A stretch of DNA of 64,000 nucleotides from Rhodosorus marinus CCMP1338. Taxonomy: Eukaryota; Plantae; Rhodophyta. The position numbers were made by a program, and so were the translations under genes. How positions within the stretch are numbered: position 1 is the first letter of the stretch; every line of letters begins with the position of its first letter. Shown one piece after another: positions 14,996 through 60,355 of this stretch. Below the pieces are notes generated by a model, which was not told the origin of the DNA, made no database searches, and saw only the letters and a program-made list of their open reading frames with translations. The stretch spans positions 930,001 through 994,000 of the forward strand of contig JAMWBK010000009.1 in assembly GCA_029953675.1 (NCBI GenBank). Direction: 5' to 3'.

Positions 14996-15033
<38 letters not shown>
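14996..15033. repeat. (AT)n microsatellite, ~19 units
   Basis: Perfect AT dinucleotide run visible directly. Confidence 0.95.
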
Positions 15034-15037
<4 letters not shown>

Positions 15038-29266: not shown

Positions 29267-29522
29267 GGTGGAATGGTGTTTATCGCCTTCCGCCTTTTCC
29301 GGCGGGCGTGACGCCCTGACGCTCTGAACACTTGGGCGCGGAGACTTTGGACGATCTGCTGAGGTGCTGCCAACACATTGCGCAAGTGTACGGACTGGTG
29401 GAATGGTGTTTATCCCTTTCCGCCTTTTCCGGCGGGCGTGACGCCGTGACGCTCTTAATACTTGGGCGCGTAGACTCTGGACGATCTGCTGAGGTACTGC
29501 GAGCTCATTGCGCAGGTGTACG
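29267..29522. repeat. Tandem direct duplication, 130-bp period (29267-29392 / 29397-29522)
   Basis: Both copies begin GGTGGAATGGTGTTTATC and share TTCCGCCTTTTCCGGCGGGCGTGACGCC and GGACGATCTGCTGAGGT; scattered substitutions. Confidence 0.93.
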
Positions 29523-42752: not shown

Positions 42753-44122
42753 TTAACGGCTACTGAATAACTTCCTTCTGATGATGTTCCCAGAAAGCCC
42801 AACGAGAACGCCAATAAATATCTTGCCATGTTCTTCAAGCAACTGGGAGATTTGGTTTGGTTTTTCCTGATTTGGCGTCCGTTCGTTGATGGTCCTGTCC
42901 TCTGTTTTCAAAAGCGCCCGTCGATAGTCATCCGCGCCTGTCGGATCTGCAGACATGCACGAGAGCCCTGCCTCGCTCGGAGGTGCCTGAGAAAAGCGAG
43001 GTTTCAGAATCATGAATAGATAAGTCGGCGTGGTGGTGATGTAGCAGGTTTTCGATTGCTTACGCGCTTGAGTCGATAAAGTTCCGGAATGACACTTGAA
43101 GCTGTTGACTGCATGTCAAGCTCATCTCCTAGGTTCCCTGCGGCCTCCGTGCAGACATCGGACAGGTGCCGCACTGCTGTGGAATACATGCCAATCTGAA
43201 GATCTTTCAGAGCATCCGCAATTTGTGGAACGGTCGAGATGATGGTTTTCCGAATCTCCACTAGCTCCGCCTCATACATTGCCTGAGCATTGCAAAAGTC
43301 AGTGACCGGCCTTCAAATTTCCGTCTGATCAGTCCTCTGCGATGAGCCATGTGTGTTCAACGAACCTTTTGCTTTCTTTCAAGCTCGTTGTCAGAATTGT
43401 CGGTGTCGTTTTGATCCGCGTGATTTGACGAGTTCACACCGAGAAGAGCGGAGAAGGCAAACCTGTTTTCCAAGGGACCCGACTTGACCTTGTTGAAAGA
43501 GGCGTTCCCTTCTAGCAAGATTTGAATTCTGCGGTGCAGCAGTTTCATGGCTTCCCAAATGCGCTCATCGAACCGACTTTCAAACATGCTGCGAACAGCA
43601 TATGTGAGCTCCCTTTGAGAATTTCGAAATGCTGGGGGCACCTCATCTGAGAGATGAACGTTGGCCGTGCTGTACAATCTGTGGAAATGGTTCTGAGCCT
43701 GAGCAGAGAGCTTCAGGGACGCCTCTGTAGACGATCGATAAGCCTATGTGGAGTAGCCAGAAGTCAGCCGGGGAGTAAGACTCCGGTTCTGTCCAGCCAA
43801 AAAGATATCTCCACTAACTCATGGAAGAAGATGCTTACTTTCAAATCATCCAGCACCTTCACAATCAATCTCTCCAGCTGTTTTCCGGTAAGCTGGACTG
43901 ACTCTACTCTCCGCTCCCCATGCAACTTCACCGGTGCCAAAGACGTGCTCACAGCGTTGTTGTGCGAACCTGAAAATCTTAAAAGCCTCAGGGCATGACA
44001 CGCGTATTCGATTCAATATGCTGTTGTGGCTCACCTTCGTTTTCCTTCTTTGCCCCCACATTCAAGCTCGTCTGCTCGAAGGAATGGAGAACCTCAGACT
44101 CCCAATCCAAGCTTTCCCCCAT
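42753..44122 (-). CDS. Uncharacterised helical protein with a C-terminal hydrophobic (tail-anchor-like) segment, ~5 exons
   Basis: In-phase exon joins (MGESLDWESEV...ENEG|SHNN...DDLK|AYRSST...|...LYRLKR|APPSE...) ending KIFIGVLVGLSGNIIRRKLFSSR*. No family recognised. Confidence 0.6.
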
Positions 44123-45057
44123 CCCGAGTTCCTGACTCCCGAGAACTACTAGAACTCCTTGTTCTCAGCTGGTCACTAAGTACAGATCAAACACAATCGA
44201 TAGTTTCACCTACTCCCATCCACCAACAGACCTCAAACGTAGTCATAGAACAGACCGATCGTGCCACTCAGAAATAACTTTCAACAAACACCCCCCTCCG
44301 CCAAAAAAAAAAAATAAATCAGATCAGCTCCATTCAATACTTGAGCGCAGTCATCAAGAACTAGTACCAGGGCAACTTCTTAGCATATTCAACAGGGTAA
44401 AGCACCTACCCACCATCGAACCTACACGCCATGCAAGTCACCCATCCCATTTCTGAAATGACATCCATTTTAAAAAACAACGGCGTATTTTTTAAAAAAG
44501 GGTAACCATTTAACCAATAAACAATAAAACGCTTTTCAAGCTCGAAAAATCCGGTGAGTTCCTCCTGAATTGAATAGCGGAAGAAAGTACAGCTAGCTCG
44601 GTTTTTGATCAGTTAAGACAATGATATATACATACACGTGTCTCTATAATCGAATTATTATCTAACAAGCGTCCTTTCCCTCCAACAGAGACCTTTTGGG
44701 GTTCAAGGAAGACACAGTCTGTTGCTCCTTTGAGGAGTGTTTTGCTATTCACCAGCGCAGAGGTAGTCGGGTTTCGCCGTATGACACTTGATCTCGAGTT
44801 GACTCTCTTGCGTTTGAGCACGATCCAACATGTCTTCTGACCGTCTGTTTTATATATATATAGGTTAAGTTAGTTCACACCATGACGCCACCGATCGGTG
44901 GTACAGCGACGGTCAAGAAGCAGGCAGCTGGCGGCCAGATAAGCAGATGAGCGGATGAGCGGTCCGGCTAGAAATGTACACTGTTAATCAAAACCCTTCA
45001 AATGATTAGGATGTGCTTGGCACAAAACTGAGCAGGCCCTCGAGAATCACCTCGCAA

Positions 45058-48000
45058 CTATGCTTTGAACGACTCCGTGCTCTCTCGTGTCCCTGCGCTA
45101 CGATCTTCCGGCGAATCCGCAACATCCCCCAAAGCCGCCTCTTCAGGCGACGCCAAGCTTTCCCCAACGCGCCCAACGAGTTTTTTTCGAGCTTCCAAGG
45201 AGGACAAAATTACGTCAATGTCAAGGGTGTCAACTACGAATACTGAGCGCCCCGTTGCTCCATACACCCTGATCATGAGAACAGAAACGAGCCGTCAATA
45301 CACCACAAGTGACCACCTAACGAAGTTCCTTGTTCACCACGTACCCGACATTCAAATGGAGCAAGCACTTCCACACAGCATCTCTCATTTTCGTTGCTTG
45401 ACTGTACCTTGGCTGGTAAGTCCCATTCCCAACGTGGAATCTTATCTGCCCTTTCGGTCTCAGCTTCGTAAAAACGCACCTGCACAACAGTAATCGCGCT
45501 TCAATCAGTCTCCTGGGACCCTGGCGAAGTTCACATTGGAGTAGTTCTGCCGGAGTAGGGAGCCATACCACACGGCAGTCAAAGCGGAACAAACAGAGTA
45601 AGGAACCAGGTTGACGAATACGGTGCCATCGTCCCAAGTCTCCGCAAACTGCTTTCCTTTCCACTCCATAAACAGGTCCACAGCTTTCTCGCAATTATAA
45701 CCGTGCCTTCTCACCACACCGTCGATCAGACCAGTGTACGTCCACGGGTCAGAAACAACCCCTGCACACAATCCAGAATCGGGAACAGCGGTCAGCGATT
45801 GTTCTGCAAACTAGACGCGCTAGTCAATCAGGTATACCTCTTTTTTTCATGCTTGCGAATACGTTGAGGGCTTTCTCCAGATCGTTCAACAAAGTGTATG
45901 CCATGATAAGGTCGTTACATAGACGCGTCGTCATCGAATGACCTTTTTCCAGTAATTCACGCACAGTATTTTCGACTTTGGAACGCTGACCGAGTCTCGC
46001 ATATGAGATGATCAGCTTCCCATAGTCACGGTCTTGCAGCTCCATTCCTGCGCACACACAATCGGGAACAGCGGTCAGCAATTGTTCTACAAACCAGAAG
46101 CGCTAGGCAATCACCTACACAGACCCACAACAGAGACTATGTGGCAGAATCTTAGGTGATTTCAAACCTTTGCCTCTGACAGCCCTGGTGAGCATGTCCG
46201 CTCGATCGTATAAGCCCAAAAGTACGTAGCCCCTCACAAGCCCGCTAAGTGTGTTTTCTCTTGGTTTCAAGCCGCTCCTAAGCATCTCGAACACTACGTC
46301 CTCGGCTCTTGACATCTGCTTGCTCTTGCAATATCCCTCAATCATTATGTTAAACACGCTACCATCAGGTTTGATGTTGTCATCCAACATCATTTTGAAC
46401 ATCTGTGCCAGATATCAGATTCGGCAGCAAATTCAACAGAGAAGAAGGTCAGCCAGCAATTCTTTCCAATACCAGTCGCAGTCAGAGAGAAGAAGCATAG
46501 CGTGTAGCATATTCTAACCTCTTCCGCTTTCACCATGTCGAAGTTTTGACAGTACATCTTTATCATTGTCGAATACACAACCAAGTTGGGCAGGATTCCA
46601 ACACTCATCATATCCAGGAACAGCTTGTTCGCCTGTTGCACTCTCCCAGCCTCGCCTATGTAGACGACAAGATAGTTATTCGCAATGTTTTAGATCCGGG
46701 TAGGTTCAAAAACTGTATCGCTGACTTGTCCTGACGCGGCAATAGCCAGAAAGACATACCCTGAATCTTGATTATCATGGCGTAAGTGTAGAAATCAGGC
46801 TCGGGTCCAAATTCACGAAGTAGATCAAAGAGCTCCTGAGCTTCTGACGTGAAGCTCGCATCGCCGTAACAGAGTAGCAGTTCGTTGTACGCTCTCAGCT
46901 TAGGTTCGAATCCGAATGAACGCATTGTTTTCAGAGCTTTCCTAGCTCCATCTACATCTTGCATTCTTGAATAAGATCTCAAAACAATGTTGAATGTGTT
47001 CGCAACAACAGGCCGCCCTTCGCCAATCGTCCTCTCGTAGAGTGATATAGCCGCTCGATAGTTTCTGTGATAATGATAGGACTCGATCATAGCAGTGACC
47101 AGCCGACCCTGCCCTCTATCGTCTAAGGTGGAGAGGGAAGCATGAAACAACTCTTCCGCCTTCCGTAACTGCATACATGGAAATCATAGCGTGAAGGGCT
47201 TGTTAGAGTCGTCAGGATTCTGTGGACAGGACTCCCATATAGGAGACCCCAATATGATGCTAGCTCATCAAAGAGTGGTTGTCATAGTGCAGTTCTTACG
47301 TCTCCGCTCCGCGAAACTGCATTCAAAAGCGTCGGAGCTGTGGTACTGCTTGCCTCAAATCCTGCCGCTAGCATCATGTCGTGGATTTTGCTTACTTGAT
47401 CCATGTCTCCCATGTTCGCGTACGAATTCATTATTAGTTGGAAGGAATAGCGACTGGCAGTTCCTAGGAAATTAGCACGTGTATCATACCAGCAGGACAA
47501 CAAGAAGATTCAGCTCATGAGTCGTGGGCAACACATTAGACGCACACTACGCACCGGAGGCGCATAACTGTTCAAAAAGGACTTTCGCTTTGTCAAAATG
47601 GTGAAAAGTCAAGTAGAAGAACAACAGAGTTTCTGACATGTGATCGTCCTCATCCCGGTTCGCCGCAATACAGTAAAGTTCGAACATGTCGAGTATCCGC
47701 TTGCTAAATTCCGATCCTTGAAACTTTTTGTGCAAAGTGAGCAACCATCCGTCCCCAACCGGCACATTCCTCTCAAGCATGAGCTTAACTATGTCAAGTG
47801 TTCGCTCCGGAGTTGCATAGCTGTGAAACCGTGCGAAACGTAACCCAAAGTTCAGAAAAGAGTACGGAACGAGAGAAGCCGAAAACAGCGTCTCAATGAG
47901 CAGCTTACCGAAGCAAGAAATGGTAGTCGGTTATATCACATTTCCCGGAAACTACCAGCTGCCAGGTTTCAGCAGTCTTCCGAGCATTGCTAGCAGATCC

Positions 48001-48295
48001 TTCCGATCGTCTTCTTGTAGAAAGACGGTCTGAGTCCTGCTTATTTGTGCTCCAGTCACTACATCCCCGCCTGAAGTAGGCACGAACGATTCGCTCCTCA
48101 TGAAATAATCCTCTCACTAGCGAGCCTGTTCCCACATAGTAAAACCTGTCATCAAATCTGCATTGAGCTTTCAAACCACTTTTGCTCCAAAGACAACGCA
48201 CCAGCAGACTTCAGAAGCATCAGCTTTTGTCATAGAAAGAACTTCCTCCGATTTTATACCTACCGCCGAAGCGGTCACTACCACGAGCTAAGCAT
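45058..48295 (-). CDS. Multi-exon pentatricopeptide-repeat protein with C-terminal SMR-like domain
   Basis: Many PPR motifs (FNIVLRSYSRMQDVDGARKALKTMRSFGFEP; VYSTMIKMYCQNFDMVKAEE; VFNIMIEGYCKSKQMSRAEDVVFEMLRSGLKP). C-terminus VFVNLVPYSVCSALTAVW|RLIE...QIRFHVGNGTYQ...KMRDAVWKCLLHLNVG|VYG..GRSVFVV. 5' start inferred (MLSSC|LLVRCLWSK). Confidence 0.87.
45762..46119 (-). repeat. Two near-identical intron sequences within the PPR-SMR gene (intron A 45762-45837; 3' part of intron B 46048-46167)
   Basis: Plus-strand cores AATCGGGAACAGCGGTCAGCGATTGTTCTGCAAACTAGACGCGCTAGTCAATCA and AATCGGGAACAGCGGTCAGCAATTGTTCTACAAACCAGAAGCGCTAGGCAATCA, 49/54 identical. Confidence 0.93.
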
Positions 48296-49518
48296 CCGTT
48301 CAGTCAAGCCAACGAGAGTACCCAACAAACAATTCGCCAACTGAAAAAGACAACTACACTGCACGTCCAAAAGAAAGCAAAATAGGGAGAAAAAAGTACC
48401 AGCAACACCTAGTCTAGTGTGGATCTGATAAGCGAATCCAAGTCATAACAAATCTACACATAACCTCTCCATTCCCGTCCCTCTCCTCCCCCTCCCCCTC
48501 CCCCTCCCACCCCCGTAAATTCAAGTTATCCCCAATACTCACATCCACCATTGTAACCTCGTCCACCAACCCCAAACTCATCGATTATTCATGAATCCGA
48601 ACAACCAGCTGTGTTTACCCACCCCCACGATAACATGCAAAATTTTCTAGTTTCGCTATTTCTAGAAACTAAACGCCCAAAATATAACTATTTTGCAACT
48701 CTTTCCACATTTTCTCCCAAATTAAACCCGGATTGTATCGTATATAGATCTGAGTTCCTAACATCGCTCAAGTTCGGTTTAGTACTTTACCCCCCTTCTG
48801 CTTCCGCTCTATTGCGTTTTAGGTAAGTGAAAACGCCACTCCTAAAAGAAGACCATTTTTCGTAGAAAAAGTCTTCTCCATTGAACATATTTCTTGTTAT
48901 TATAACTTATTTTTATAGCTGTCTATTTTTGTCTTTCTTGACCATAATTAGCCCATACTCACACTGCTGGCGGTGGCTAGCGGTGACGTTCAAATTGACT
49001 GATATAGTCAATTTGTGCCCAAGGTTCGTTGGAGTACTGCAGAAGCTCCGGATGGGGGGTTGACCGCTTTGGTTTCGCCATGCCAAGTCATGCTGTTGTA
49101 GCTCCCATAGGCTTCCTATTTTATTGGGGAGGACTCCAGGTTTCTCAACCCCACCCTCGCCAAATGTGAAGAGGCGATGCCAGGCTTTTTGCTCGCGGCG
49201 CTACCTACCCGGGTCGGGAGGAGAAAGCCAGGTTTGAGCTCGGCCAAGCCACGATCTCTGCTTTTTGGAATTCGTTGAAGTTAAATCCCTCGAATAGATA
49301 AAGCTGCCCCTGGCTCGCGTTCTTGACAATCGCTGCCGCGAATGTCTTCTCACTCTCCCCGAAGCGGTTTCCGTCCGAGCTCGGCAGTGCGTTTGGAGGT
49401 TATTGCTGTCACCAGATTGTCGGGAGCTCAAAGTGCGAAGCGCATAGAAGAATTCTGTCAGAGAGGTCTAGGTCTCTAACTTTGGAGTGGGACGTGCTTG
49501 TGGGCTTGTGATATCCGG

Positions 49519-50011
49519 ATGAGGTTCTTCGGGAGGGCTATTAACCCCGGCATCTTCAACGGACTTGGCCCGGTGACTCGGAGGGCACGAAAACCAGCTG
49601 GCCTAGAATCGTCAGCCCGGAATGCTCCTGAGCAAGTGGATCAGCCGTTGCCGGGCTCAATGATTATGCTGGCTGTGCCTAAGAAAAAAAGATCTAAGAA
49701 TGTTGTGAAATGGCGCCGGTACTTGATGAGTAAGCGCCGACCTCCCTCGCGGTATTCCATCGTCTTCTCGTCCTTTCCGTTTCAGAATAGCTAGGAGAAA
49801 ACGTTCTGCATGCGGGTGTAGCCCGAGCTACTCTGTCTTCTAATACAAAAATAGAGATTCTGAGAGAGTTCCTGCTTTAAACTACCGACTTTCTTTCGCA
49901 GGGCCAGATCCGCACACGGCGCTCATGAAATGTGAGATCTGTGGGAAGTGGAAGGAATGGAGGACTCTGTGTCCTCACAAATGTCCAGGGAGAAGACGAG
50001 GAATTCCATAA
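49519..50011 (+). CDS. MRPL32: Mitochondrial ribosomal protein bL32m with cleavable presequence
   Basis: Long Arg-rich leader, then AVPKKKRSKNVVKWRRYLM|RPDPHTALMKCEICGKWKEWRTLCPHKC: the AVPK start of mature bL32 plus the CxxC...CxxxC zinc motif. Intron ~49730-49901. Confidence 0.85.
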
Positions 50012-50361
50012 TTTCTGACTAGGTGTGAAACTGTAGTGTCCATAGAAGAGAACTGGCTGTTTTCAATATAAAAAAAAAAGAAGGAACAAAGCAAGAAACG
50101 TCTATGAAAGTCAACGCACACTTGCTTTTAAGCTCAGCCGGATGAGCCTCAACCGGAGAGAACAGAATCTACTTTTCGCTAGAATTCGGCTCGGAAAGAA
50201 TAAATCCTGAAATGGCAGTCCCCCAAAGACCCACATTGCAATTCCCACGTCAGGGTGTGTGCAATGCCGCTATGCTCCACCGGAGATTGGATCACCACAC
50301 GGCAGCCGCTTTGCAAGGTCGATGCTGTCCAAGAAGTCTGTGTTCATCTTGTTTCGAAGAA

Positions 50362-51700
50362 ATGGGATTTCTGCTTCCTTTTTCGTTACCTGAGAGTCGT
50401 GGTCCATCGAAAACTCTGAAGAAGCGAAGACGACGCTGTTCTATAACCAGTTCTCAATGGAGTCCCGGAAGCGAGAACCCGGAATCTACTTCCCGCAGGG
50501 CGTTGCTAGCGGGCTTGGCGAGCCTTCCGTTTGTTACACCAGCTGGAGCTGAAGCTTTTTGCGGAGATGCAGAACCGTTTTGGGCTCATTACATCGACTG
50601 GCAGGAGGGATTAGCCCCGATCGGAGGACGTGACGTCTACCTGCGCGTGCTTGGGAATCAGAAGCAGGAGAAGCGAGTAGGCGTCTCACCGCTAATTGTT
50701 CTTGCCGACGCAGGCTTGCCATGGAACTACCTCGAGACAGTCTCGGCTCTAGCTGTGCGCAGTTCAACAACAGTTCGTCCTGCGAATAAATCCAGTGATG
50801 CAGAACCTAACCAACAGTTCTCTTGTCCATAGGAGGACAACCGCAGAGTCGTGTTCTTCGACGCCCTTGGATGCGGAAAGTCTGCCCCACTTCGGCTGGA
50901 CTCGATCGATGTAAGTGACGTCTGGGAAACGCTAGTTTTCAGGTACTTCGAAACACCTTTACGAACACCGCCACCTGACCAAAGCAAGCGTTTCGGATAA
51001 CAGGAAATCTTTTCCGCTGCGTCTGAAGAAGTACTGGCTGTTGCACAATTTTTGGAGCTGAAGACGATGCACATCTTTGGTCATGGCTTCGGAGCGGCAG
51101 TTGCTCTAGATGTGGCGAGCAAGCAGCAGTCAATACCGGTGAGGTCAGTAGTCCTTGAATCTCCGACACTGCAGGGCGGAACTGAGAAGGAGATTAGGTG
51201 AGTTCTCCGGTTCCCCAAAACCAGAGAAAAATCTAAAAGCTTGAGCTAATAGCGTACAAACTCGCGGTGGTTTCTTTTCTTGGTCTGTGCCCAGTCCTTC
51301 TCAGCTCATCGGTGAAACTAACTCGAACGTTTGCATCGGTCCCAGCATACAAGGCGCAAGGACCGACACAATGCGCAAAGTCTACACCTCCCAGGTAAGC
51401 GGTTACATGCATAGAGCTTCTAGAGCTGGTTTTTGTTATCTACTTTAGCTAATCAGTGAAAGGGGAACCACCGTTTGCTCGGTTCAGTGGAACAAGCTGT
51501 CAGAGGTGAACGAAACAGCGCAGCCAGTGCTGGTTGTATCCAAAAACTCAGGTACAAGTCCGTACCAGTTGAAAGAGTCCATTCAAGATGTACGTATCGG
51601 TACCTCACGCAGCCCACATCTGGAGCGAACTACGGAATTCAACGAAACTGTTCGAGGATTCCTGACGAAAGGAGATCCCGGAACGAAGAAGAAGAAGTAG
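50362..51700 (+). CDS. Alpha/beta hydrolase (proline iminopeptidase S33-like) with bipartite plastid/Tat lumen signal; nucleophile Ser absent
   Basis: SRRALLAGLASLPFVTPAGAEA (twin-Arg, hydrophobic core, AxA); PLIVLADAG..NYLETVSALAV|EDNRRVVFFDALGCGKS; HIFGHGFGAAVAL; C-terminal SRSPHLERTTEFNETVRGFL. Confidence 0.8.
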
Positions 51701-51973
51701 GATGGACTTTGGCAAAACGTAACTAAAGAGTGGCAAGTCTTTTTTTTATTTTTTTTTTTTCATTCTGTGCTCCGGCTGATTGAAAAGACCGTCAGATTTG
51801 GATTGATACGCTAGAGGGATTGGAACCATGGAAAAGCGATGACAAAACCGCAAATAGGGAGAGTGCGCAATCCGGGCTTTGGCTGCTTGTGCCTTCTTTT
51901 TTTTTAACGGGTCGACCGCCAACTTGGTTGAACCTTTTTTTCTATGACTTGCCGGTGAATTTTTTTGCGCAAA

Positions 51974-53965
51974 TCACGCAGTTTGTGGTGTGGCCGGAGC
52001 TTCAGGGGCCGCTGCCTTGGCTGCTTCTCCTTCTCTCTTCGCCTCAACGAGGCTAGCCAATGTTGCCGCTGTCACGGCGTCATATAAACCCAGACTCTCA
52101 ACAGAGTCAGCCAGACCGCATTCCTCCTGAAGCTTCTTGACTCCAGCTTCAGTGTACTTCCCGTAGAATCCAACACGATGCCGCATATTCGCGGGAACCA
52201 TTTTGCCCACCTCCACGAGCATGGCCTGCAAATGCATGACTTTGTTCCCACTTGAGCCCTTCTCAAGCGGTGCTTTCGGAGTGGTCTCACCCTCAAAGTT
52301 CTCGTCCTTCTCCCACGGCTTCTGCTTGAGCATACCCATGGGACCCATTCGCCTGGCCATCTTCCGCTTGTTCATCTCTTGAAGATGTTTTCTAACTGAA
52401 ACCTCACCCAACGCTTTCTTCACAGCAGCCAAAATCTTCTGTACACTGTCCTCAGATAGCCCAGCTTGGTCCAGCTCAACCTTCAGGTCTTGTTCGAAGC
52501 TATCGATCTTTTCCGCTGCGATGCCCTCCTCAGCGTTGGCTTCTGCACCAAGAGTGTCTCGGACAAACTTTTTCATCAGAGGAAATACCTGAGGCCCTGA
52601 AGTAAAAGCGGCCTGCATCTGGCCATTCACCCATACTGACTTAGCGGCCTCCTCAATCGCTTGACGAGTATCATCAGAAACAGACTCCATTGCCTTCTGG
52701 AAACGGTGCATCATGTGGGGGCCAAACGGCATTCCTCCCGCCATCCAGGGACCGGGACGCCCTTGCTGAACACCGTACCCTGGCCGCCTAAAGCCTCCTA
52801 AGAACGGAGAAAAGCTGCTCATTAACCAGAAAATGTTGGACAGGTCAAACTCCGCAGTGGATTCCTCAGTTTCCTTGGACTGTTCAGCTTCAGTCGGCAT
52901 ATTCTCAACAAGAGTTTTCAATGCAGCTGCAGTAATCTCATCATAGGAGCCAGCCACCTCGAGCTGTAGGTTTTGCTCTTCCTGCAGGGTCTTGATGGCA
53001 GCCATCGTCCGCGGTCCGAAGAATCCAGCTCGCCAACGGATGTTTTCGTATTTCAATTTTCCAAGCTTAATCAGGCAAGACTGGAGGTGCAAGACTTTCG
53101 GCCCCTCATCACCGCGCTTCAGCGGTGCCTTCGGAACAATTTCTCCTTCGAAACCCTCCTCGTTCTCCCATTCCTTTTCGCGCATTCGAAAAGCCTCACC
53201 TTCGGTTGCCCACTGGAAGCGCCGATGGGCAACAAAGAGTAGGCGTCGAGCAGGTTTCTCCTTGAGGCCTGCTCTGACCGCATCGAGAATCTCGTTGACA
53301 TTCGGTTCTGCGATGCTATCTTGCATTACCGCGCGGAGATTCTCTATGAGAGTATCTACCTTGGCAGAATCTAGATCCTGTTCAATTTGAGATTCCAAAG
53401 ATAAGTTCTCCTCAGTGAAGCCTCTCATGTTCTCCAGGATCTTGGGAGCGATCGCCATGAAATTCTCCATCTGTCCAGAGTCGAAGATGTGCATGGCTGC
53501 ATCCTTGAACCGATTCTTCACTGGCTCAGGAACTGCTTGAATGCTCTTCACAATCGGATTAATGAATCTGCCCCCGGGGAAGAAGTGCATGAAAGAACCC
53601 TGGGGCATACCAGAGAAGAATTCGGTGAACGAAGGCATGCCACCCGGCATGGGTCCGCGAGAAGATCGCTTCTTTCCCTCGTCGACTGCTAGAGCCTCCA
53701 TTGTGAGCAGCCCTCCATCCTGTCCTCGCTGCAACTCTGCTTTCGAGACAATCACGGCCTCTACAAACTCATCCTCGGATGTGACACGAACCATATCACC
53801 CTCATCATCCTTGTACTGGATGATGAACTCCTTGAAACTCGGTTTATACAGCTCAACTAGTCTTTTCTGCAACTCTTCATAACTACACTGCCCAGCATTC
53901 AGCCGAAAACGACGAACATCTCCGCCGTACCTAACCTTCACCGGTACAGGACCGCGCACTCCCAT
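51974..53965 (-). CDS. PB1-domain protein with two peptidoglycan-binding-like (PG_binding_1-type) domains, intronless, 663 aa
   Basis: aa ~7-78 PB1 (VKVRYGGDVRRF...IQYKDDEGDMVRVTSEDEF); aa ~281-352 LKRGDEGPKVLHLQSCLIKLG...GFFGPRTMAAIKTLQEEQNL...GSYDEITAAAL; aa ~566-639 LEKGSSGNKVMHLQAMLVEVG...GFYGKYTEAGVKKLQEECGL...GLYDAVTAATL. Confidence 0.88.
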   Translation of the reverse strand: MGVRGPVPVKVRYGGDVRRFRLNAGQCSYEELQKRLVELYKPSFKEFIIQYKDDEGDMVRVTSEDEFVEAVIVSKAELQRGQDGGLLTMEALAVDEGKKRSSRGPMPGGMPSFTEFFSGMPQGSFMHFFPGGRFINPIVKSIQAVPEPVKNRFKDAAMHIFDSGQMENFMAIAPKILENMRGFTEENLSLESQIEQDLDSAKVDTLIENLRAVMQDSIAEPNVNEILDAVRAGLKEKPARRLLFVAHRRFQWATEGEAFRMREKEWENEEGFEGEIVPKAPLKRGDEGPKVLHLQSCLIKLGKLKYENIRWRAGFFGPRTMAAIKTLQEEQNLQLEVAGSYDEITAAALKTLVENMPTEAEQSKETEESTAEFDLSNIFWLMSSFSPFLGGFRRPGYGVQQGRPGPWMAGGMPFGPHMMHRFQKAMESVSDDTRQAIEEAAKSVWVNGQMQAAFTSGPQVFPLMKKFVRDTLGAEANAEEGIAAEKIDSFEQDLKVELDQAGLSEDSVQKILAAVKKALGEVSVRKHLQEMNKRKMARRMGPMGMLKQKPWEKDENFEGETTPKAPLEKGSSGNKVMHLQAMLVEVGKMVPANMRHRVGFYGKYTEAGVKKLQEECGLADSVESLGLYDAVTAATLASLVEAKREGEAAKAAAPEAPATPQTA

Positions 53966-54487
53966 CCTTCAAAGCACCGAAACACAAACTCAAAATCACT
54001 TCGCTGTCTTCAGATCGCCAACAAACAACACAGATGTTCCAAAAACAAAACAAACTATAACAACTCTTAACATCCAACCCACCCAGTTCCCAACCCACCT
54101 CTGTCCCAACTCCTTTCATGGAATCTACCTTTTTATACTCTCACTCACACCAACATCTGACACTGGACAGCACTTGACTCGACTCTACTTTTTTGAAAAA
54201 TAATTTCGAGTGTTCTTAGAGAGAATTGAACTTGCGACCTAGAGAATCTTCCAACTGAGAACACGCGCGCCGTATCTAACTCTCCGCAGTATTGGAACAG
54301 GGGTATAAGTTTGTTTCCTGTGCAATATAAATTTGAATAATAATAATGAATATGAAGATGTTCTATTTTTTTTATGGTTTCTATGACCCGTTGGAAGAGA
54401 GAATTTAAATTCCACCCGTGTGGCGCAGGTTCGAAACTCGGTGGTGGAGCTTTCGCCGTTGTTTGGACACTGGTCGTTTTCTTTGGA

Positions 54488-54573
54488 AGCCTGGTTAACT
54501 AAGGGTCGAGTTTTGGGAGTGACCGGAAGCGAGCCGAAGCACTCCCAAAACTCGATCCTTAGTTAACCAGGCT
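54488..54573. repeat. 34-bp inverted repeat with 18-nt loop (long hairpin)
   Basis: Arm 1 AGCCTGGTTAACTAAGGGTCGAGTTTTGGGAGTG (54488-54521); arm 2 CACTCCCAAAACTCGATCCTTAGTTAACCAGGCT (54540-54573). One mismatch, which is a G:U pair in the plus-strand RNA. Confidence 0.95.
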
Positions 54574-55457
54574 GAGGCTTTAGGTCCGATAGAGGACGTG
54601 AGATCTGCAATCAGGCGCTAGTTTGAAGCCTGTACAGAGGACCCGCAAATGAAGAAGACTCAGGCGCCAGAAAGAAAAATCTTTGGTCTGGCCCTGTAGA
54701 TGAAGAAAGCGCTGAGCAGTAGAAAGAACGTCTGTCTGGAAACGCTAGACCCTGGCACTCCACGGTAAACCCTGTCCCATGGTGAAGAAAAGCGCTCATG
54801 ACATATGTACTTGTAAAATATTAAATTAACGGATAAATGTTTACCAATCAAATTAATATTTAGGAAATATTAACAATCTTATTGTATAATAATTTTTATA
54901 TTAAATATCATGAATCTCGAATGCAAAACAAAAAATGAATGACGCTTTTATTATTCGATATTAAATACGAGATACTACTCAAAATGAAGCATACTCTACA
55001 TATGTATTATATTTCAAAAATATTTTACCGCTAGTATGTCACATATCTGCAAAGAGTGTGGTTTTCGAAATCGTACATTTTTCTTTTGATATTCAGATGG
55101 TGGCGTGGTCCGGATTTGCGGGGATTTCGTGGACGATCTCGGATGATACTCTCTCTTCCGGCTACCAGTGCAGTACATAGCCGATGACCCTCAAACGGAT
55201 CCGGTACGGACAGGCCATTCCATCCTAGTGGAGCTGCTGGAGATAGGGTTGGGGATGTGGGAGGTAACAGCGTCCTTGGAGGGGTAGGAGGATGTCGAGA
55301 AGCCTAAGTTGAGCTTTTTGCACAACTCAGGTTCTTGGTGGTGACAGATCTTATCTGTTTTGTTTGGTTTCTGTTTTTGGGAAGGCGTGGGGTTTTTGTG
55401 ATTCTGTTGTCGGGTCCAGGGACGACGGATACTTTAGGTATCGATAGTTCTAATTAG

Positions 55458-58400
55458 ATGATAAGTTTCATCCCGTCGACATTAAGAGTGTGTCTGAAAT
55501 CCACATCGACATCGGTTTGTATTCGATCCAAGGTGAGCGAGATTGGTACAGGATGTTGTGGTCAGTTTTGGTTATTTTCCGGGTTGTCTACTGAACAGTG
55601 TGGACCTGTTTTCAGAATTTTAAGGTTAGATCGGAGAGAAAAAGGCTCGTGCGCGTGAGATCAATGGCGTCCTCATCGATTGAAACTCCGAAACCGGGAA
55701 GCGAGGGGAGTACTGATAAGAAAAAGAATCGCTTGGCAAGTGAAAAATCGCCGTACTTGCTCCAGCACCAGTACAACCCCGTCGATTGGTATCCGTGGGG
55801 AGAAGAGGCATTCAAGAAGGCCAAAGATGAGAACAAGCCGATTTTCCTGTCAGTTGGGTACAGCACGTGTCACTGGTGAGATTATTCTGCAATGTCCTGC
55901 TGCAATATTTTACTGTGTAGTCACAGCTGACGAAACATATGGCAACTGAAAGGTGCCATGTCATGGAACGAGAATCGTTTGAAAACGAAGACGTAGCAAA
56001 GCTTCTGAACGATAGCTTCGTTGCTATAAAGCTTGACAGAGAAGAGCGTCCAGACGTAGACTCCGTGTACATGACCTACATTCAAGCGACGAGTGGCCAG
56101 GGCGGTTGGCCGATGTCTGTCTTTATGACACCTGATTTGGTAGGTAGAAGTGAAGCAGTGTATGGTTGTCCATGAAGCTCAATATCGCTGACTGATGCAC
56201 GCCGAATCGGAAGAAACCGTTTGTTGGAGCGACATATCTACCCATCGACAGATTCTCGTTCGCGCTGAAAGACATATCTGAGAAGTGGAATTCCATGAGA
56301 GACAAGCTCGAGGAAGAAGGAGAAAGGATCGTCACGGCGCTTCGTCAGCTCGTTGCACAACCCAGAGGCGGACTAGCAGAGACCCTGGACAAAGATTTTT
56401 TGACCCTTGGTAGCCATTCGCTCTACGCATGGACACGTGGGCTTTTTTTATAGCGGCTCCAGAGAGCGACTGAACGTAGAACACATCGTTTTGGGGGTTT
56501 CTCGCTCGTAGGGTGCAAAACGGCATCAGACATTTTTGACGACGAGTACGGAGGCTTCGGAAACGCTCCAAAGTTCCCACGTCCATGTGTTTTCGAGATG
56601 CTCTTCGCCATGTGGAAGATGGGGGAAGATGAGTCCGTTGCTTCAGATGCCAGGGACATGGCGTTGTTCACGCTGGAGAAGATGGCAAAGGGTGGCGTGA
56701 ACGATCAGCTCAGGGGAGGCTTTCATAGGTATGAGGAACGGTGACCAAATGGTCGCCGCGAGTATTTTCAGACCTTAATCATCGGAGCACCTTCACTCTT
56801 TGCACGCTCTATCACCACCCCAGATACTCTGTTGACCGATACTGGCATGTGCCACACTTTGAGAAGATGCTGTACGATCAGTCGCAGGTTGCCATGGCTT
56901 TTCTGCAAGCCTTCCAGGTCACAAAGGACACCCTTTTCGAGAGTAGCGCGCGAGGAATCTTGGACTACGTATCGGCCGATATGAAAGATGAAGAGACTGG
57001 TGGATTCTACTCAGCGGAAGATGCTGACTCAGAAGTGCCGTTTGGTGCAGAAGAGGGTCCTACGAAAGCTGAAGGTGATGAGCAACATCGCTCCCATGAA
57101 CCTACTGAAGCCGTATCCTAACTGACTCTCGTGATTCCGGACAATGGAACAGGAGCTTACTATGTCTGGACGTCGTTTGAACTTAAGCTTGTTCTCGGAG
57201 AACAAAACGCCGGAATGTTCTGCGACTACTACGGAGTCTCCCAAGAAGGAAACGCGCCAGCTACGTCAGATCCGCAAGGGGAGTTTGAGGGCAAGAACAT
57301 CTTGAAGATCGAAAAATCACTCAACGAAGTTGCTGAAAGTCAAGGAAAGACTGTTGAAGAGGTGAGACGGGTTCCCAACCACAAAGCTAGTCGTACGAAA
57401 TAGTTCCAAACGATCTTCTGTATGCTTTGAAGGTCGACGCGTACCTGACCGCCGCGAAGAAAAAGCTTCTCGAGCAAAGGGGCAAACGACCAAAGCCCCA
57501 TCTGGACGACAAGATTGTTACCTCCTGGAATGGACTAATGACTTCAGCGTTCGCAAGAGCTGCAAATATTCTTGAAGACGAAGCGTACAATGTAGTAGCA
57601 TCGAAAACGGCAAAGTTTCTGAGCGAGACCATGTGGAATGGTACGTCTAGCAAGGTTGACGTGTTGACCAGAGTGCTGGCTCAACGACAGGACCGTGTTC
57701 TTAATAGCGTCCACTCACTACGAAATTGTCCTTCGATAGGTGAGGTATTGTTCAGAAACTATAGAGAGGGCGTCTCTGGGATAGAGGGCTTTGCTGAAGA
57801 CTACGCGGCAACGATATGCGCCTTTCTTGACGTGTACGAGATGGACGGAGATTGCGAGTGGATTCGAAAAGCCTTGAAGTGAGAAAGCCAAGAACACTCA
57901 TCTCGATTAAGATCGATTCCTGTGTCAGTGCTGAAAGCTTTTTTCTAATGCACAAACTAGGCTGCAAGATGTCATGGATTCTAAGTTTTGGGACAAGGAG
58001 GGTGGCGGATATTTCTCAACCAAGGAGGGAGATGAATCCATCGTTTTCCGGAAGAAGGAGGACTACGACGGTTCTGAACCGAGCCCAACTGGGGTTGCTT
58101 GCGCCAATCTGCTACGCCTTGCAAGCCTAACTGGAAGAGATGATCTTTTGGAGAAATCTAAGCAATGCGCATCTGCGTTCGCCACGATACTCAAGAAGAC
58201 CCCGTTTGCCATGCCCAAGCTAGCAACCAGTGCTTTCTGTGCCCAATCCGGGCTCCGACGAGTCGTAATCGCCAGCGATCCCAGCGCCTCGGCCAGCAAG
58301 GAGTTTGTAAGTACAGACCCCATCCAGCGACTTCAATGTTCACTACTTTAGATCAGATACTCAAGGTTCTTCGGATTGTCCTTCCTAGGCCCACGCATTC

Positions 58401-58601
58401 TTCGCGCTTGGAGTACCGAATGTTGCCTTTGTAAGAGTTGGGCCGGCCGGACCAGGAGCCGATAGCGAGCTGCTGGGAGTTGAAACGAAAGATATGGTAG
58501 CCCGCGATGGAAAGGCCACTGCCTACGTCTGCAAAGGGACTACATGCATGGACCCTGTGACTGACGTTGATGCTTTTGCCGAGCAGCTGAAGAAGTTGTA
58601 G
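55458..58601 (+). CDS. SPATA20: SSP411/SPATA20/YyaL-family protein (thioredoxin-like domain + alpha/alpha toroid) with transit-like N-terminus, multi-exon
   Basis: [27 protein letters not shown]...[12 protein letters not shown]|[11 protein letters not shown]...[11 protein letters not shown]...GGWPMSVF; [10 protein letters not shown]; [13 protein letters not shown]; [11 protein letters not shown]; [15 protein letters not shown]; DYDGSEPS; C-terminal [13 protein letters not shown]. Confidence 0.95.
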
Positions 58602-58692
58602 TGGCGATCTTCCCGAGCTCTTTACAATTCCTACATTACAGTCTCTCTTTCTTGGTCCCCGAATCAGAAGTATGCACAAAAACTCAAGCCTT

Positions 58693-60355
58693 TCATTGAT
58701 ACTCTCCGGTCTTCCGGAATCTCGCGCAGAAGAATCCTGGAGTGTCGTGACGACCCCAGGGCTCAAACCTCTGAACCATTTCACGCTCCTCATCGGAAAG
58801 CCCCATTCCTTCCACACCAACCTCGCCTAGCCTAACCTTGGGCTTTTCTAGCTTAAGAGGAAACTCATCCAACGCGTACCTAATCCAGCGGGAATCAGCT
58901 GTGTTAGAACTTCGTCTTGCCCGTGCGAACCAGACTGAGCTGTGGGAATCGCAACTTACCGAACATTGCTCTCATTCTCTCCTGGGTTTATTGTGCATGT
59001 CGAGTAAACGAGGACACCGCCTGGCTTCAAGAGCATGACCGCCGCACGTAAAAAGTTTCTTTGGAACAACGCCTTCTGCTGCAGGTCTGTACTTAGACGA
59101 TCGCTGAATTCTAGCCTGGGTCTGATGCCCAATGCGCTGCATGGCGGATCAACAAGGATTCGGTCGAACGATTCCCTTGCAAACATGGGTGGATTAGCTC
59201 CATTCGTGACCTATTGCGGCGCGGAGACGAAGGCACCGGCTGATCAGATTGCGGGGCTTGTAGGATCCTACAGGCACTGGCGGCTTTGCTTCACCTCCCC
59301 GCTTTCGGAAATGTATTTTCTGTACTTCGTTGCGTCGTTTCTATGGGCTTGGATTATGGTCAGCCCCAGGCGCTTCGCATTGCGCTCGATGTCTTTGACT
59401 TTCTCGTAACCCTTGTCAAACGCCACCAATCTTCCCTTGTCGCCCATGAGGATTGCCATGTGAGTTGTCTTCCCGCCAGGGCTTGCGCACATGTCGAGGA
59501 CATATTCGCCTAGGTGCGAGCAGAACGGACGAAAAATTAGCTGAATGCTGGGAGTATTCTTATTGCATCTTCAAGAGCAGAGGCCGCGGTCAGATTTCTA
59601 CCTGGTTGAGGATCAAGAACATGCGACACGACCGCTGAGGGCAAATTTTGAAGGTAGATCTTATCCTCCATGATCCCGTTTAGGGATGGTGCAACAAACA
59701 CGGCCTCGTCAAGCACGATCGCGATTCCATGAGCTCTTTCTGTGTGGAAGAGCATCTTTCGATCCATTTTCGCAATTCCGTTGCCGAGGTAGTGTCCCGG
59801 GTGATTGTCCTCATTCTTGAACTACAGGAGTAGGGCACGTAGTCGAGGAAACCAGGATCAGATTCCTCTCCTAACAGCAAAACACAAGATCAGGCGAGCT
59901 AAGGTACGTTTATGGGGACTGCTTACTGATCCTTTGGTTAAAGAATCCGTGATATCGGCGTACACGGCAACTCGAATCCCCACAGCAAGGGACGTCTCCG
60001 CCGCCATGACGCCCGGAGCGAAAATGTTTGCACCTCTGAGAACTGCCTCTCCACATTTTCTTGAAACCCAGACCTTTGAGAGGTTGCTCGAGGATCGGTC
60101 GATCGGTCCCAGAGTCTGTACAACGACAACATCGGGCAAGCTTTCCAAAATTGCGACCGAACCTTTCAGCGCCTCCGGGACAAGAGCTCGCAGCTCCTCC
60201 GCAACTTGCTCAGGAGTCGTAACCAGGGTGTTCACCCGTGCAGTAGTCGGAGGAGGTCTCGCCAGATGTTCAAAGTACTTGAGCGCTACTTCCTCCCCGA
60301 AGAGTCTCTTCATCGTTTCATGGGCATCCCCACCTACACGTTGCACGGAATCCAT
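58693..60355 (-). CDS. NSUN6: NOL1/NOP2/Sun-family RNA m5C methyltransferase with PUA domain (NSUN6-like), multi-exon; N-terminus may extend further upstream
   Basis: PUA-like VSRKCGEAVLRGANIFAPGV; QNLPSAVVSHVLDPQPG; DMCASPGGKTTH; FDRILVDPPCSALG; LVYSTCT; C-terminal DTPGFFCARFRK. Confidence 0.93.

What the first reader, a model, noticed from the sequence alone, without database searches (positions are those of the whole stretch)
51974..53965. PB1 polymerisation domain fused to two peptidoglycan-binding-like domains: candidate p62/NBR1-style bacterial cell-wall sensor or cargo receptor
Seen: an intronless 663-aa ORF in an intron-rich neighbourhood. PB1 starts at residue ~7, leaving no room for a signal or transit peptide. 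It has both the basic Lys (VKVRY) and the acidic OPCA motif (YKDDEGD...E). Two PG_binding_1-like segments sit at aa ~281-352 and ~566-639. Established: PB1 domains with both faces self-polymerise in the selective-autophagy receptors p62/SQSTM1 and NBR1, whose C-terminal UBA domains choose the cargo; PG_binding_1 is typical of bacterial and phage cell-wall hydrolases. Inference: here the cargo-binding position is taken by tandem PG-binding-like domains with no catalytic domain, suggesting a cytosolic polymer that binds peptidoglycan or another glycan (innate sensing, xenophagy, or a relic link to the plastid wall). Caution: PG-binding-like folds also occur in eukaryotic proteins not shown to bind peptidoglycan (plant pTAC5, MMP prodomains). 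I do not know of this architecture being described, but I could not search.
Basis: partly seen in the sequence, partly recalled or inferred. Interest (0 to 1): 0.8.

Follow-up and report, generated by a model that had tools for sequence, protein, structure and literature searches.

The report
Red-algal PB1 scaffold with peptidoglycan-binding-like domains
This is a real, expressed gene of the red alga Rhodosorus marinus encoding a probably self-polymerising cytosolic scaffold with two copies of a new helical domain plus a peptidoglycan-binding-type domain; its family looks related to NBR1-type cargo receptors, in a lineage reported to lack autophagy genes, and is uncharacterised.

Summary
Window 51974..53965 (-) is an intronless 663-aa ORF of Rhodosorus marinus, also found in transcript-derived protein sets. 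Pfam confirms PB1 (45.5 bits) and two PG_binding_1 segments (42.6 bits). An AlphaFold model of the first segment matches solved peptidoglycan-binding domains.

First, the protein is PB1 plus a tandem duplication (33% identity, E 1e-45) of a ~250-aa cassette: a ~116-aa all-helical domain ('X') plus the PGB. X models at pLDDT 94 and has no Pfam, PDB or viral-structure match. Second, it belongs to a PB1-X-ZZ-PGB family whose named members are all red algae; this copy has lost the ZZ finger. Third, other protists have PB1-ZZ-PGB-UBA proteins, and one has PB1-ZZ-PGB-FW-UBA, a true NBR1 carrying a PGB.

So the NBR1/p62 resemblance probably reflects ancestry. The PB1 keeps the basic Lys, the OPCA motif and the tandem arginines tied to filament formation. 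But no family member has an FW or UBA domain, this protein has no clear LIR, and red algae are reported to lack core ATG genes. A classical autophagy or xenophagy receptor is therefore unlikely.

Best reading: a polymerising, multivalent adaptor with an unknown ligand. It is a new variant of a known kind, and no paper in the searched library combines these domain terms.

The parts
51974..53965 (-). Whole intronless CDS: 663 aa plus stop. Architecture is PB1 - linker - X1 - PGB1 - linker - X2 - PGB2.
53690..53947 (-). PB1 domain (aa 7-92), type AB. It has K10, the tandem Arg R18-R19 and the OPCA motif Y51/D53/D57/E66.
   Evidence: Pfam 45.5 bits. The best PDB sequence hit of the protein is the Arabidopsis NBR1 PB1, 6tgn. 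The family profile against PDB hits aPKC, Par6, AtNBR1, p62 and TFG.
53573..53680 (-). Linker 1 (aa 96-131), a Phe/Met/Gly/Pro-rich low-complexity stretch ('MPGGMPSFTEFFSGMPQGSFMHFFPGGRF').
   Evidence: Composition. Residues from about aa 110 on are almost all identical in three Rhodosorus-type sequences. Relatives carry RGG- or M/G/P-rich linkers at the same place.
53219..53572 (-). X1 (aa 132-249), the first copy of a new all-alpha domain of ~116 aa.
   Evidence: Local iterated HMM. AF2 pLDDT 93.8, pTM 0.85, six long helices plus a short one. No Pfam, PDB or BFVD match.
52898..53173 (-). Conserved Trp motif ('KEWE', W266) plus PGB1 (aa 265-356; Pfam 288-349).
   Evidence: 29.8 bits alone. 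The W is nearly invariant in the family. The model matches SleB, CtpB, SleC, Ldt and EpsAB peptidoglycan-binding domains with Foldseek probability 1.00 and rmsd about 2 A.
52721..52897 (-). Linker 2 (aa 357-415), an acidic then Phe/Met/Gly/Pro-rich low-complexity stretch.
52364..52720 (-). X2 (aa 416-534), the second copy of the X domain.
52031..52321 (-). 'KPWE' motif (W551) plus PGB2 (aa 549-645).
   Evidence: 21.8 bits alone, E 2.2e-4. Homologous to PGB1 through the cassette duplication, E 1e-45. It pairs with PGB2 of the orthologues P0006 and P0007.

Best explanation
The gene encodes a cytosolic member of a PB1-X-(ZZ)-PGB scaffold family whose named members are all red algae.

Inferred mechanism:
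1. The type-AB PB1, with its tandem arginine, links molecules head to tail into oligomers or filaments, as in p62, plant NBR1 and TFG.
2. Each subunit displays two X-PGB cassettes, so the polymer becomes a high-avidity binder for a repetitive or polymeric ligand. The ligand could be a glycan, a muropeptide-like molecule or a peptide.
3. The Phe/Met/Gly/Pro-rich linkers probably add weak multivalent contacts that favour condensates.

The family most likely descends from an NBR1-like PB1-ZZ-PGB ancestor. It lost, or never had, the FW and UBA domains. In the Rhodosorus lineage it also lost the ZZ finger and duplicated the cassette.

Red algae reportedly lack the ATG8 system. The downstream step therefore cannot be canonical selective autophagy. 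It is either pure scaffolding and sequestration, or ATG-independent delivery to the vacuole, as in the ESCRT-dependent Nbr1 pathway of fission yeast.

Shown here: the domains, the duplication, the family, its conservation and the existence of matching transcripts. Inferred: polymerisation, ligand binding, the NBR1 origin and the cellular outcome.
For: - Domains and fold.
- Cassette duplication: E 1e-45. It predates the split from the 40%-identical orthologues P0006 and P0007.
- Family: 38 sequences carry X (35 distinct cluster representatives). Of those 35, 30 have PGB, 25 PB1, 21 ZZ, none UBA or FW.
- Named members are only Rhodophyta: Rhodosorus, Compsopogon, Porphyridium, Erythrolobus and Agarophyton.
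- PB1 polymerisation determinants are conserved and match those defined experimentally in PMC6978347.
- Link to NBR1: P0100 is PB1-ZZ-PGB-FW(91 bits)-UBA. P0041, P0051, P0052, P0055 and P0070 are PB1-ZZ-PGB-UBA. The PGBs of that group fall in the numerically adjacent average-linkage cluster to the X-family PGBs.
- Expression and constraint: two ~90%-identical full-length Rhodosorus-type proteins, one an MMETSP transcript.
- Cytosolic location: an in-frame stop just upstream and no hydrophobic segment.
- ATG-independent precedent: the S. pombe Nbr1 NVT pathway needs ESCRT, not the macroautophagy machinery (PMC8997447).
Against: - No experiment exists on any family member.
- The PB1 and ZZ profiles are not specifically closest to NBR1. 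PB1 hits aPKC and Par6 first, and ZZ hits HERC2 first. Common descent of the whole architecture is therefore plausible but unproven.
- Type-AB PB1s can also form heterodimers only. PKCzeta, for example, does not polymerise.
- The ligand of X and of PGB is unknown, and PG_binding_1 folds in MMP prodomains do not bind glycans.
- The absence of ATG genes was taken from the literature for red algae in general. It was not checked in the Rhodosorus genome.
- Most X-family members are unnamed metatranscriptome proteins, so restriction to red algae is not proven.
Confidence: 0.5

Rival explanations
1. The protein is a cytosolic receptor that binds bacterial peptidoglycan or muropeptides through its PGBs, polymerises through PB1, and triggers innate sensing or xenophagy-like disposal of bacteria.
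For: - The PGB fold and motif are genuine and strongly conserved.
- PB1-ZZ-PGB-UBA proteins occur in a bacterivorous choanoflagellate (Acanthoeca). One true NBR1 carries a PGB. A PG-directed NBR1 function is therefore conceivable in some protists.
Against: - Red algae are reported to lack core ATG genes.
- There is no UBA, FW or LIR here or in any X-family member.
- Rhodosorus is, to my knowledge, a walled phototroph with no known phagocytosis.
- PG binding is untested, and the family's PGBs form a cluster of their own with 'R-x-G-F/Y-G-P-x-T' in place of the 'DGxFG' pattern seen in 60 other hit domains.
Confidence: 0.12
2. A signalling or assembly adaptor that works through heterotypic PB1 pairing with other PB1 proteins. 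X and PGB would be protein-protein interaction modules, as with PG_binding_1-like folds in MMP prodomains or plant pTAC5. No polymer and no glycan would be involved.
For: - The family PB1 profile is closest to the aPKC and Par6 PB1s, which form heterodimers.
- Rhodosorus has at least one paralogue, P0012, that could be a partner.
- ZZ domains in relatives resemble HERC2, PRT1 and p62 ZZs, which to my knowledge bind peptide N-termini.
- X looks like a helical bundle, a typical protein-binding surface.
Against: The tandem arginine plus the full OPCA motif is the signature of self-polymerising PB1s, and it is conserved. Duplicating the whole cassette fits avidity for a repetitive ligand better than a 1:1 adaptor.
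Confidence: 0.25
3. A scaffold for a red-alga-specific cytosolic polysaccharide structure, for example floridean starch granules or cell-wall precursor traffic. The PGBs would act as generic glycan binders.
For: All named X-family members are red algae. To my knowledge, red algae uniquely store starch in the cytosol. The arrangement is cytosolic, multivalent and polymer-forming.
Against: No evidence links PG_binding_1 to alpha-glucans or galactans. PGB-bearing PB1-ZZ proteins also occur in a choanoflagellate, which to my knowledge has no cytosolic starch. This is pure inference.
Confidence: 0.08
4. An annotation artefact, a pseudogene or a recent bacterial transfer of the PGB region.
For: The gene is intronless in an intron-rich region.
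Against: - Full-length ~90%-identical proteins occur in two other Rhodosorus-type sequence sets, one an MMETSP transcript.
- 40%-identical full-length orthologues exist.
- The family spans several red-algal lineages.
- The PGBs cluster with those of other proteins that carry eukaryote-type domains (PB1, ZZ, UBA), not with the one named bacterial hit.
- GC3 of 0.56 sits in a local GC of about 0.5.
Confidence: 0.02

Closest known systems
NBR1 (PB1-ZZ-FW-LIR-UBA), the ancestral soluble selective-autophagy receptor; plant AtNBR1 in particular
   Same: - N-terminal type-AB PB1 with the basic Lys, tandem Arg and OPCA motif. AtNBR1 is the best PDB sequence hit of the protein: 'VKVSYGGVLRRFRV' against 'VKVRYGGDVRRFRL'.
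- Family relatives keep a ZZ finger after the PB1.
- At least one true NBR1 (P0100) carries the same kind of PGB between ZZ and FW.
- The logic is the same: a polymerising head with ligand-binding modules behind it.
   Different: - No FW domain, which is the defining feature. No UBA, no ZZ in this copy and no LIR.
- It has two X domains that NBR1 lacks.
- The organism's lineage reportedly lacks ATG8.
p62/SQSTM1 (PB1-ZZ-LIR-KIR-UBA)
   Same: A filament-forming type-AB PB1 with a double arginine finger. Low-complexity regions and multivalency could drive condensates.
   Different: p62 is confined to metazoans (PMC9582228). This protein has no ZZ, LIR or UBA, and its cargo modules are X-PGB cassettes.
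S. pombe Nbr1 in the NVT pathway
   Same: An NBR1 relative that works without the macroautophagy machinery, using ESCRT instead (PMC8997447). This shows that an ATG-less organism could still use such a receptor.
   Different: To my knowledge, the fission-yeast protein has three ZZ domains and an FW domain, binds hydrolase cargos through the ZZs, and has no PGB or X.
TFG (PB1 - coiled coil - P/Q-rich region)
   Same: A type-AB PB1 with tandem Arg that forms polymers (PMC6978347), followed by low-complexity sequence. To my knowledge it is a non-autophagic scaffold.
   Different: No PGB and no X. The PB1 similarity is weak (E 0.058).
Bacterial and phage PG_binding_1 proteins (SleB, SleC, CtpB, L,D-transpeptidases, EpsAB, endolysins)
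   Same: The same three-helix fold (Foldseek probability 1.00, rmsd about 2 A) and the same core motif (Pfam).
   Different: The bacterial proteins are extracytoplasmic and usually attached to a catalytic domain. Here the domain is cytosolic and eukaryotic, with no enzyme, and forms its own sequence cluster with 'R-x-G-F/Y-G-P-x-T' in place of 'D-G-x-F-G'.

Membership tests
NBR1 (definition of Rasmussen et al. 2022, PMC9582228: FW domain plus PB1 or ZZ) | FW / N_BRCA1_IG domain (PF16158) | tested here: not met
   The Pfam scan at E<=10 shows no FW. None of 35 X-family representatives has it. The distant relative P0100 has it at 91 bits.
NBR1 | N-terminal PB1 | tested here: met
   PF00564, 45.5 bits, aa 7-71.
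NBR1 | ZZ zinc finger | tested here: not met
   Absent in this protein. Present in 21 of 35 family representatives, between X and PGB.
NBR1 / p62 | C-terminal UBA domain | tested here: not met
   No UBA hit, and none in the X family. The C-terminus is a short Ala/Pro/Glu tail.
NBR1 / p62 | ATG8-interacting LIR/AIM motif and an ATG8 partner in the organism | tested here: inconclusive
   A regex scan found only 'GSYDEI', which lies within the PGB1 region, and no acidic LIR. The literature says red algae lack core ATG genes. The Rhodosorus proteome itself could not be searched with these tools.
Self-polymerising type-AB PB1 (p62, AtNBR1, TFG1 class) | Basic-face Lys on beta1 plus the OPCA acidic motif | tested here: met
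   K10, and Y51-x-D53-D-E-G-D57...E66. K10, Y51, D53 and D57 are invariant and E66 at least 90% conserved in 22 family PB1s.
Self-polymerising type-AB PB1 | Tandem arginine ('double arginine finger') | tested here: met
   R18-R19 align with the RR of AtNBR1. R19 is invariant and R18 at least 90% conserved in the family. The criterion comes from PMC6978347.
Self-polymerising type-AB PB1 | Actual filament or oligomer formation | not testable with these tools
   Needs sedimentation or EM of recombinant PB1.
PG_binding_1 (PF01471) | Profile match above the curated cut-off | tested here: met
   Whole protein 42.6 bits against 23. PGB1 alone scores 29.8. PGB2 alone scores 21.8, marginally below, and is rescued by its homology to PGB1.
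PG_binding_1 | Three-helix-bundle fold as in solved peptidoglycan-binding domains | tested here: met
   The AF2 model (pLDDT 92) matches CtpB, SleC, SleB (6tci: rmsd 2.0, TM 0.83 on the target), Ldt and EpsAB at probability 1.00. Foldseek E-values are only 0.05-1 because the domain is short.
PG_binding_1 | Binding to peptidoglycan | not testable with these tools
   Needs a pull-down on sacculi or muropeptide binding assays.
Red-algal PB1-X-(ZZ)-PGB family (defined here) | X helical domain followed by the conserved Trp motif and a PGB, behind an N-terminal PB1 | tested here: met
   Two X domains at E 7e-35 and 2e-37 with the family HMM. W266 and W551 sit in the nearly invariant Trp column.
STI1/DP domain (Hip, Hop, ubiquilin), considered for the Met/Gly/Pro-rich plus helical segment | Match to STI1 profiles or fold | tested here: not met
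   No Pfam hit even at E<=10. No such structure appears among the Foldseek hits.
TIPE2/TNFAIP8 fold, considered for X | Significant structural superposition | tested here: inconclusive
   This is the best PDB hit, but it is weak: E 0.6, TM 0.42, rmsd 7.5 A.

The most novel reading that the evidence does not exclude
PGB-bearing PB1-ZZ proteins, including true NBR1s such as P0100 and the choanoflagellate PB1-ZZ-PGB-UBA proteins, would be an ancient and undescribed eukaryotic system. In it, an NBR1-type polymerising receptor recognises bacterial cell-wall material in the cytosol. Red algae would keep a rewired, ATG8-independent descendant (PB1-X-ZZ-PGB) that sequesters such ligands or sends them to the vacuole by another route. 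The X domain would be a new ligand- or effector-binding fold.
Probability: 0.1. Interest if true: 0.85.

Novelty: new variant of a known kind. Interest (0 to 1): 0.55.

Why it matters
If the polymerising-adaptor reading is right, red algae kept and elaborated an NBR1-like scaffold after reportedly losing the core autophagy machinery. The elaboration includes a new X domain and a cassette duplication. That makes one question testable: what do selective-autophagy receptors do without ATG8?

The wider observation is independent of the red-algal gene. PG_binding_1 domains sit inside PB1-ZZ-(FW)-UBA proteins of heterotrophic protists. This points to a possible cell-autonomous, peptidoglycan-directed receptor outside animals and plants.

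The X domain models with confidence and has no detectable relative among solved or viral structures. It is a candidate new domain family for Pfam or InterPro.

The Porphyridium member is currently named 'E3 ubiquitin-protein ligase HERC2'. That is probably an annotation error caused by the ZZ finger: Pfam finds only PB1 and ZZ in it.

Tried and rejected
- STI1/DP idea for the Met/Gly/Pro-rich plus helical segments: no Pfam or fold support.
- X domain against PDB sequences, by profile: only designed helical proteins matched, which is compositional noise.
- X domain against PDB and BFVD structures: nothing significant. The best hit is TIPE2 at TM 0.42.
- hhalign of X against the short helical motif found between PB1 and ZZ in the PB1-ZZ-PGB-UBA group: probability 12%, so not supported.
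- Word-indexed profile searches meant to obtain taxon names: the X+PGB profile returned only 4 hits, of which only P0156 (Rhodosorus) and a Streptomyces protein were new, and the X-only profile returned none. Taxonomy therefore rests on six named members found by cluster look-ups.
- NBR1 orthology through nearest PDB relatives of PB1 and ZZ: not specific. aPKC and Par6 rank first for PB1, and HERC2 for ZZ.
- A Biopython neighbour-joining tree timed out. It was replaced by BLOSUM-score distances and average-linkage clustering.
- A second family member in the window: none found.
- tRNA and Rfam scans of the window: empty.
- Literature: no paper combines 'PB1 domain' with 'peptidoglycan-binding domain', or NBR1 with 'peptidoglycan binding'. 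The PB1 evolution paper PMC7051960 mentions neither red algae nor peptidoglycan.
- Pseudogene, artefact or recent bacterial transfer: rejected.
Full report
**1. The observation**

Window 51974..53965 on the minus strand is a single ATG-to-stop ORF of 663 aa. The exact protein is the called gene on contig JAMWBK010000009.1 of assembly GCA_029953675.1. A member of its 90%-identity cluster is named 'PB1 domain-containing protein, Rhodosorus marinus'. Rhodosorus is a unicellular red alga of the Stylonematophyceae, and the assembly is cited in PMC10250338.

The gene span equals the CDS length, so there is no intron. The four flanking genes with Pfam hits span 1.3-1.5 times their coding length, so they do have introns. 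An in-frame TGA lies 6 nt upstream of the ATG.

Two other Rhodosorus-type proteins, 91% and 90% identical, fall in the same cluster. P0004 comes from an MMETSP transcript and P0005 from JGI. They are colinear with the query over the whole length, and P0004 starts at the same Met. The gene is therefore real, has matching transcript-derived sequences, is under constraint along its whole length including the linkers, and has no room for a signal or transit peptide. The highest 19-residue hydropathy is 1.23, so there is no membrane segment.

**2. The domains**

Pfam gives PB1 at aa 7-71 (45.5 bits, cut-off 23.6) and PG_binding_1 in two stretches (42.6 bits, cut-off 23). Scanned separately, PGB1 scores 29.8 bits and PGB2 21.8 bits. 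NCBIfam sees only the peptidoglycan-binding part of the SleB model.

The best PDB sequence match of the protein is the PB1 of Arabidopsis NBR1, entries 6tgn/6tgp. The alignment pairs 'VKVRYGGDVRRFRL' with 'VKVSYGGVLRRFRV'.

**3.

Residues ~105-356 and ~386-645 are 33% identical over 260 columns, E 1e-45. Each cassette has four parts:
- a Phe/Met/Gly/Pro-rich stretch;
- a helical region;
- a short motif around an almost invariant Trp ('KEWE' and 'KPWE');
- the PGB.

An iterated local HMM delimits a core helical domain of ~116 aa, which I call X, at aa 132-249 and 416-534.

With a 26-sequence family alignment, AlphaFold2 models cassette 1 at mean pLDDT 92.3 and pTM 0.71. It models X alone at pLDDT 93.8 and pTM 0.85, as six long helices plus a short one. 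The combined pTM of 0.71, below the 0.85 for X alone, leaves the relative orientation of the two domains open. I had no access to coordinates.

Foldseek matches the PGB part to solved peptidoglycan-binding domains: CtpB, SleC, the SleB N-domain, L,D-transpeptidases and EpsAB. Probability is 1.00 and rmsd about 2 A, with TM 0.83 on the SleB domain.

X has no significant match:
- Pfam finds nothing even at E<=10.
- The PDB sequence profile hits only designed helical proteins.
- The best PDB structure is TIPE2, at E 0.6 and TM 0.42.
- The viral structure library gives nothing.

I treat X as a new, or at least unrecognisable, domain.

**4. The family**

An exhaustive phmmer search of 1.84 billion cluster representatives found 484 proteins at E<=1e-3. 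Two are full-length orthologues with the same architecture of PB1 plus two X-PGB cassettes: P0006 (40% identity, E 5e-138) and P0007 (E 4e-126).

PGB1 of the query groups with PGB1 of these orthologues, and PGB2 with PGB2. The duplication is therefore older than their divergence.

The typical layout is PB1, then a long Pro/Gly/Arg/Met-rich linker, then X, a ZZ zinc finger, [Y/P]-W-E, and a PGB (alignment). Among those 35 representatives, Pfam finds PG_binding_1 in 30, PB1 in 25 and ZZ in 21. Proteins lacking PB1 include fragments. Pfam finds UBA and FW in none.

The query, its orthologues, the Rhodosorus paralogue P0012 and the Compsopogon protein lack the ZZ but keep the Trp motif that follows it in the others.

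All members that carry a name are red algae:
- Rhodosorus marinus (P0001, plus P0012 = KAJ8900963.1, and P0156);
- Compsopogon caeruleus;
- Porphyridium purpureum (KAA8498197.1, named 'E3 ubiquitin-protein ligase HERC2');
- Erythrolobus madagascarensis;
- Agarophyton chilense.

Most members are unnamed metatranscriptome proteins, so the red-algal restriction is provisional. P0012 lies on another contig and has introns.

**5. The link to NBR1**

About 27 further representatives have an N-terminal PB1 but no X. Of these, 19 have PG_binding_1, 12 have ZZ, 6 have UBA and one has the FW domain.

Individually, P0041, P0051, P0052, P0055 and P0070 are PB1-ZZ-PGB-UBA. P0100 is PB1-ZZ-PGB-N_BRCA1_IG(FW, 91 bits)-UBA. 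P0100 thus meets the published definition of an NBR1 homologue, which is FW plus PB1 or ZZ (PMC9582228), and carries a PGB between ZZ and FW.

P0002/P0003 is PB1-ZZ-ZZ-PGB with a UBA-like C-terminus that I judged by eye; Pfam does not call it. Its source record gives a taxon id in the choanoflagellate genus Acanthoeca.

In average-linkage clustering of 278 PGB domains, the X-family PGBs form one cluster. The numerically adjacent cluster holds the PB1-ZZ-PGB-UBA domains together with multi-PGB proteins of unknown origin. None of the PB1-associated PGBs has the 'DGxFG' pattern, which 60 other hit domains show. Most have 'R-x-G-F/Y-G-P-x-T' instead. This argues against a recent bacterial transfer.

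The shared PB1 + ZZ + PGB combination makes descent of the red-algal family from an NBR1-like ancestor plausible. It is not proven. The family PB1 profile hits aPKC (7.6e-15) and Par6 before AtNBR1 (9.5e-11) and p62. The ZZ profile hits HERC2 (1.3e-16), MIB1 and PRT1 before p62.

**6. Mechanism**

Across 22 family PB1s, K10, R19, Y51, D53 and D57 are invariant, and R18 and E66 are at least 90% conserved. This is the type-AB pattern plus the tandem arginine.

Jakobi et al. 2020 showed that p62, AtNBR1 and TFG1 PB1s pellet and form filaments or tubes. PKCzeta, which lacks the tandem arginine, stays soluble, and mutating the double arginine finger abolishes self-interaction (PMC6978347). I therefore infer head-to-tail self-assembly.

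Each subunit would expose two X-PGB cassettes, so a polymer would bind a repetitive ligand with high avidity. The aromatic/Met/Gly/Pro-rich linkers are almost fully identical among the three Rhodosorus-type sequences from about aa 110 on. Relatives have RGG-rich linkers in the same place. These could add condensate-type interactions.

The ligand is unknown, and nothing here tests peptidoglycan binding.

**7. Why not a classical autophagy receptor**

The protein has no FW, UBA or ZZ domain. A motif scan finds no acidic LIR. The only xLIR-like match, 'GSYDEI', lies within the PGB1 region.

Reviews state that no orthologues of the core ATG genes were found in unicellular or multicellular red algae (PMC11449223). 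They list red algae among the few eukaryotes without ATG genes (PMC9582228). The same review found NBR1 in Chloroplastida but does not list Rhodophyta. I could not search the Rhodosorus proteome, so this point rests on the literature.

There is a precedent for an NBR1 relative acting without the macroautophagy machinery. The ESCRT-dependent NVT pathway of fission yeast is one (PMC8997447). An ATG-independent route to the vacuole is therefore possible, as is plain scaffolding or sequestration.

A link to a plastid wall is unlikely. There is no transit peptide, and to my knowledge red-algal plastids have no peptidoglycan.

**8. Novelty and score**

No paper in the searchable library combines 'PB1 domain' with 'peptidoglycan-binding domain', or NBR1 with 'peptidoglycan binding'. 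The PB1 evolution survey does not mention red algae or peptidoglycan.

I classify the finding as a new variant of a known kind: an NBR1/p62-like PB1 scaffold with a new cargo-side cassette.

Interest is moderate to high for people working on autophagy-receptor evolution and on red algae. It is limited by the complete lack of functional data.

Noticed in passing
L003:6001-7719 (GCA_029953675.1 contig JAMWBK010000013.1): Rhodosorus has a single-cassette paralogue, P0012 (414 aa, PB1-X-PGB). Its gene spans 1719 nt for 1245 coding nt, so it has introns. The double-cassette gene in the window has none, which may hint at a retrocopy origin or at intron loss.
   Followed up: partly
P0009 = KAA8498197.1 (Porphyridium purpureum), not in the window: This family member is PB1-X-ZZ plus two family-type PGB segments. 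Pfam does not call the PGBs at E<=0.01; they are seen in the phmmer match and the A2 alignment. The public name 'E3 ubiquitin-protein ligase HERC2' comes presumably from the ZZ finger alone. Pfam finds only PB1 and ZZ, with no HECT or RCC1 domain, so the name looks wrong.
   Followed up: partly
P0100, P0041, P0051, P0052, P0055, P0070, P0002 (database proteins, not in the window): PG_binding_1 domains sit between ZZ and UBA (and FW) in NBR1-like proteins of unnamed marine protists and of an Acanthoeca choanoflagellate. I found no paper combining NBR1 with 'peptidoglycan binding'.
   Followed up: partly
window 53573-53680 and 52721-52897 (-): The conserved aromatic/Met-rich stretches just before each X ('SFTEFFSGMPQGSFMHFFPGGRF' and 'FWLMSSFSPFLGGF...GGMPFGPHMMHRF') are nearly identical in three Rhodosorus-type sequences and recognisable in the 40%-identical orthologues. 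They may be a short linear motif or part of the X fold. Their role is unexplained.
   Followed up: no
window 29267-29522: Two tandem copies of a 130-bp unit at 90% identity.
   Followed up: no
window 26001-28000 and 14001-16000: Strong local GC skew (+0.36 and +0.25) with lower GC (about 0.44) than the rest of the window. The cause was not examined.
   Followed up: no
window 42753-60355: Neighbouring called genes, converted by me (L001) coordinates:
- 349-aa unknown (42753-44122, -)
- PPR protein (45058-48233, -)
- 106-aa unknown (49519-50011, +)
- alpha/beta hydrolase (50362-51700, +)
- DsbH-type thioredoxin / GlcNAc-2-epimerase-like protein (55458-58601, +)
- RsmB-F/PUA methyltransferase (58693-60355, -)
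No functional link to the PB1 gene is apparent.
   Followed up: no
L002:1761-2855 (JGI 3300016877 contig with family member P0014): A gene with an LpxK (lipid A 4'-kinase) Pfam hit lies tail to tail, 20 nt from the PB1-X-PGB gene, on a 2994-nt contig of unknown organism.
   Followed up: no
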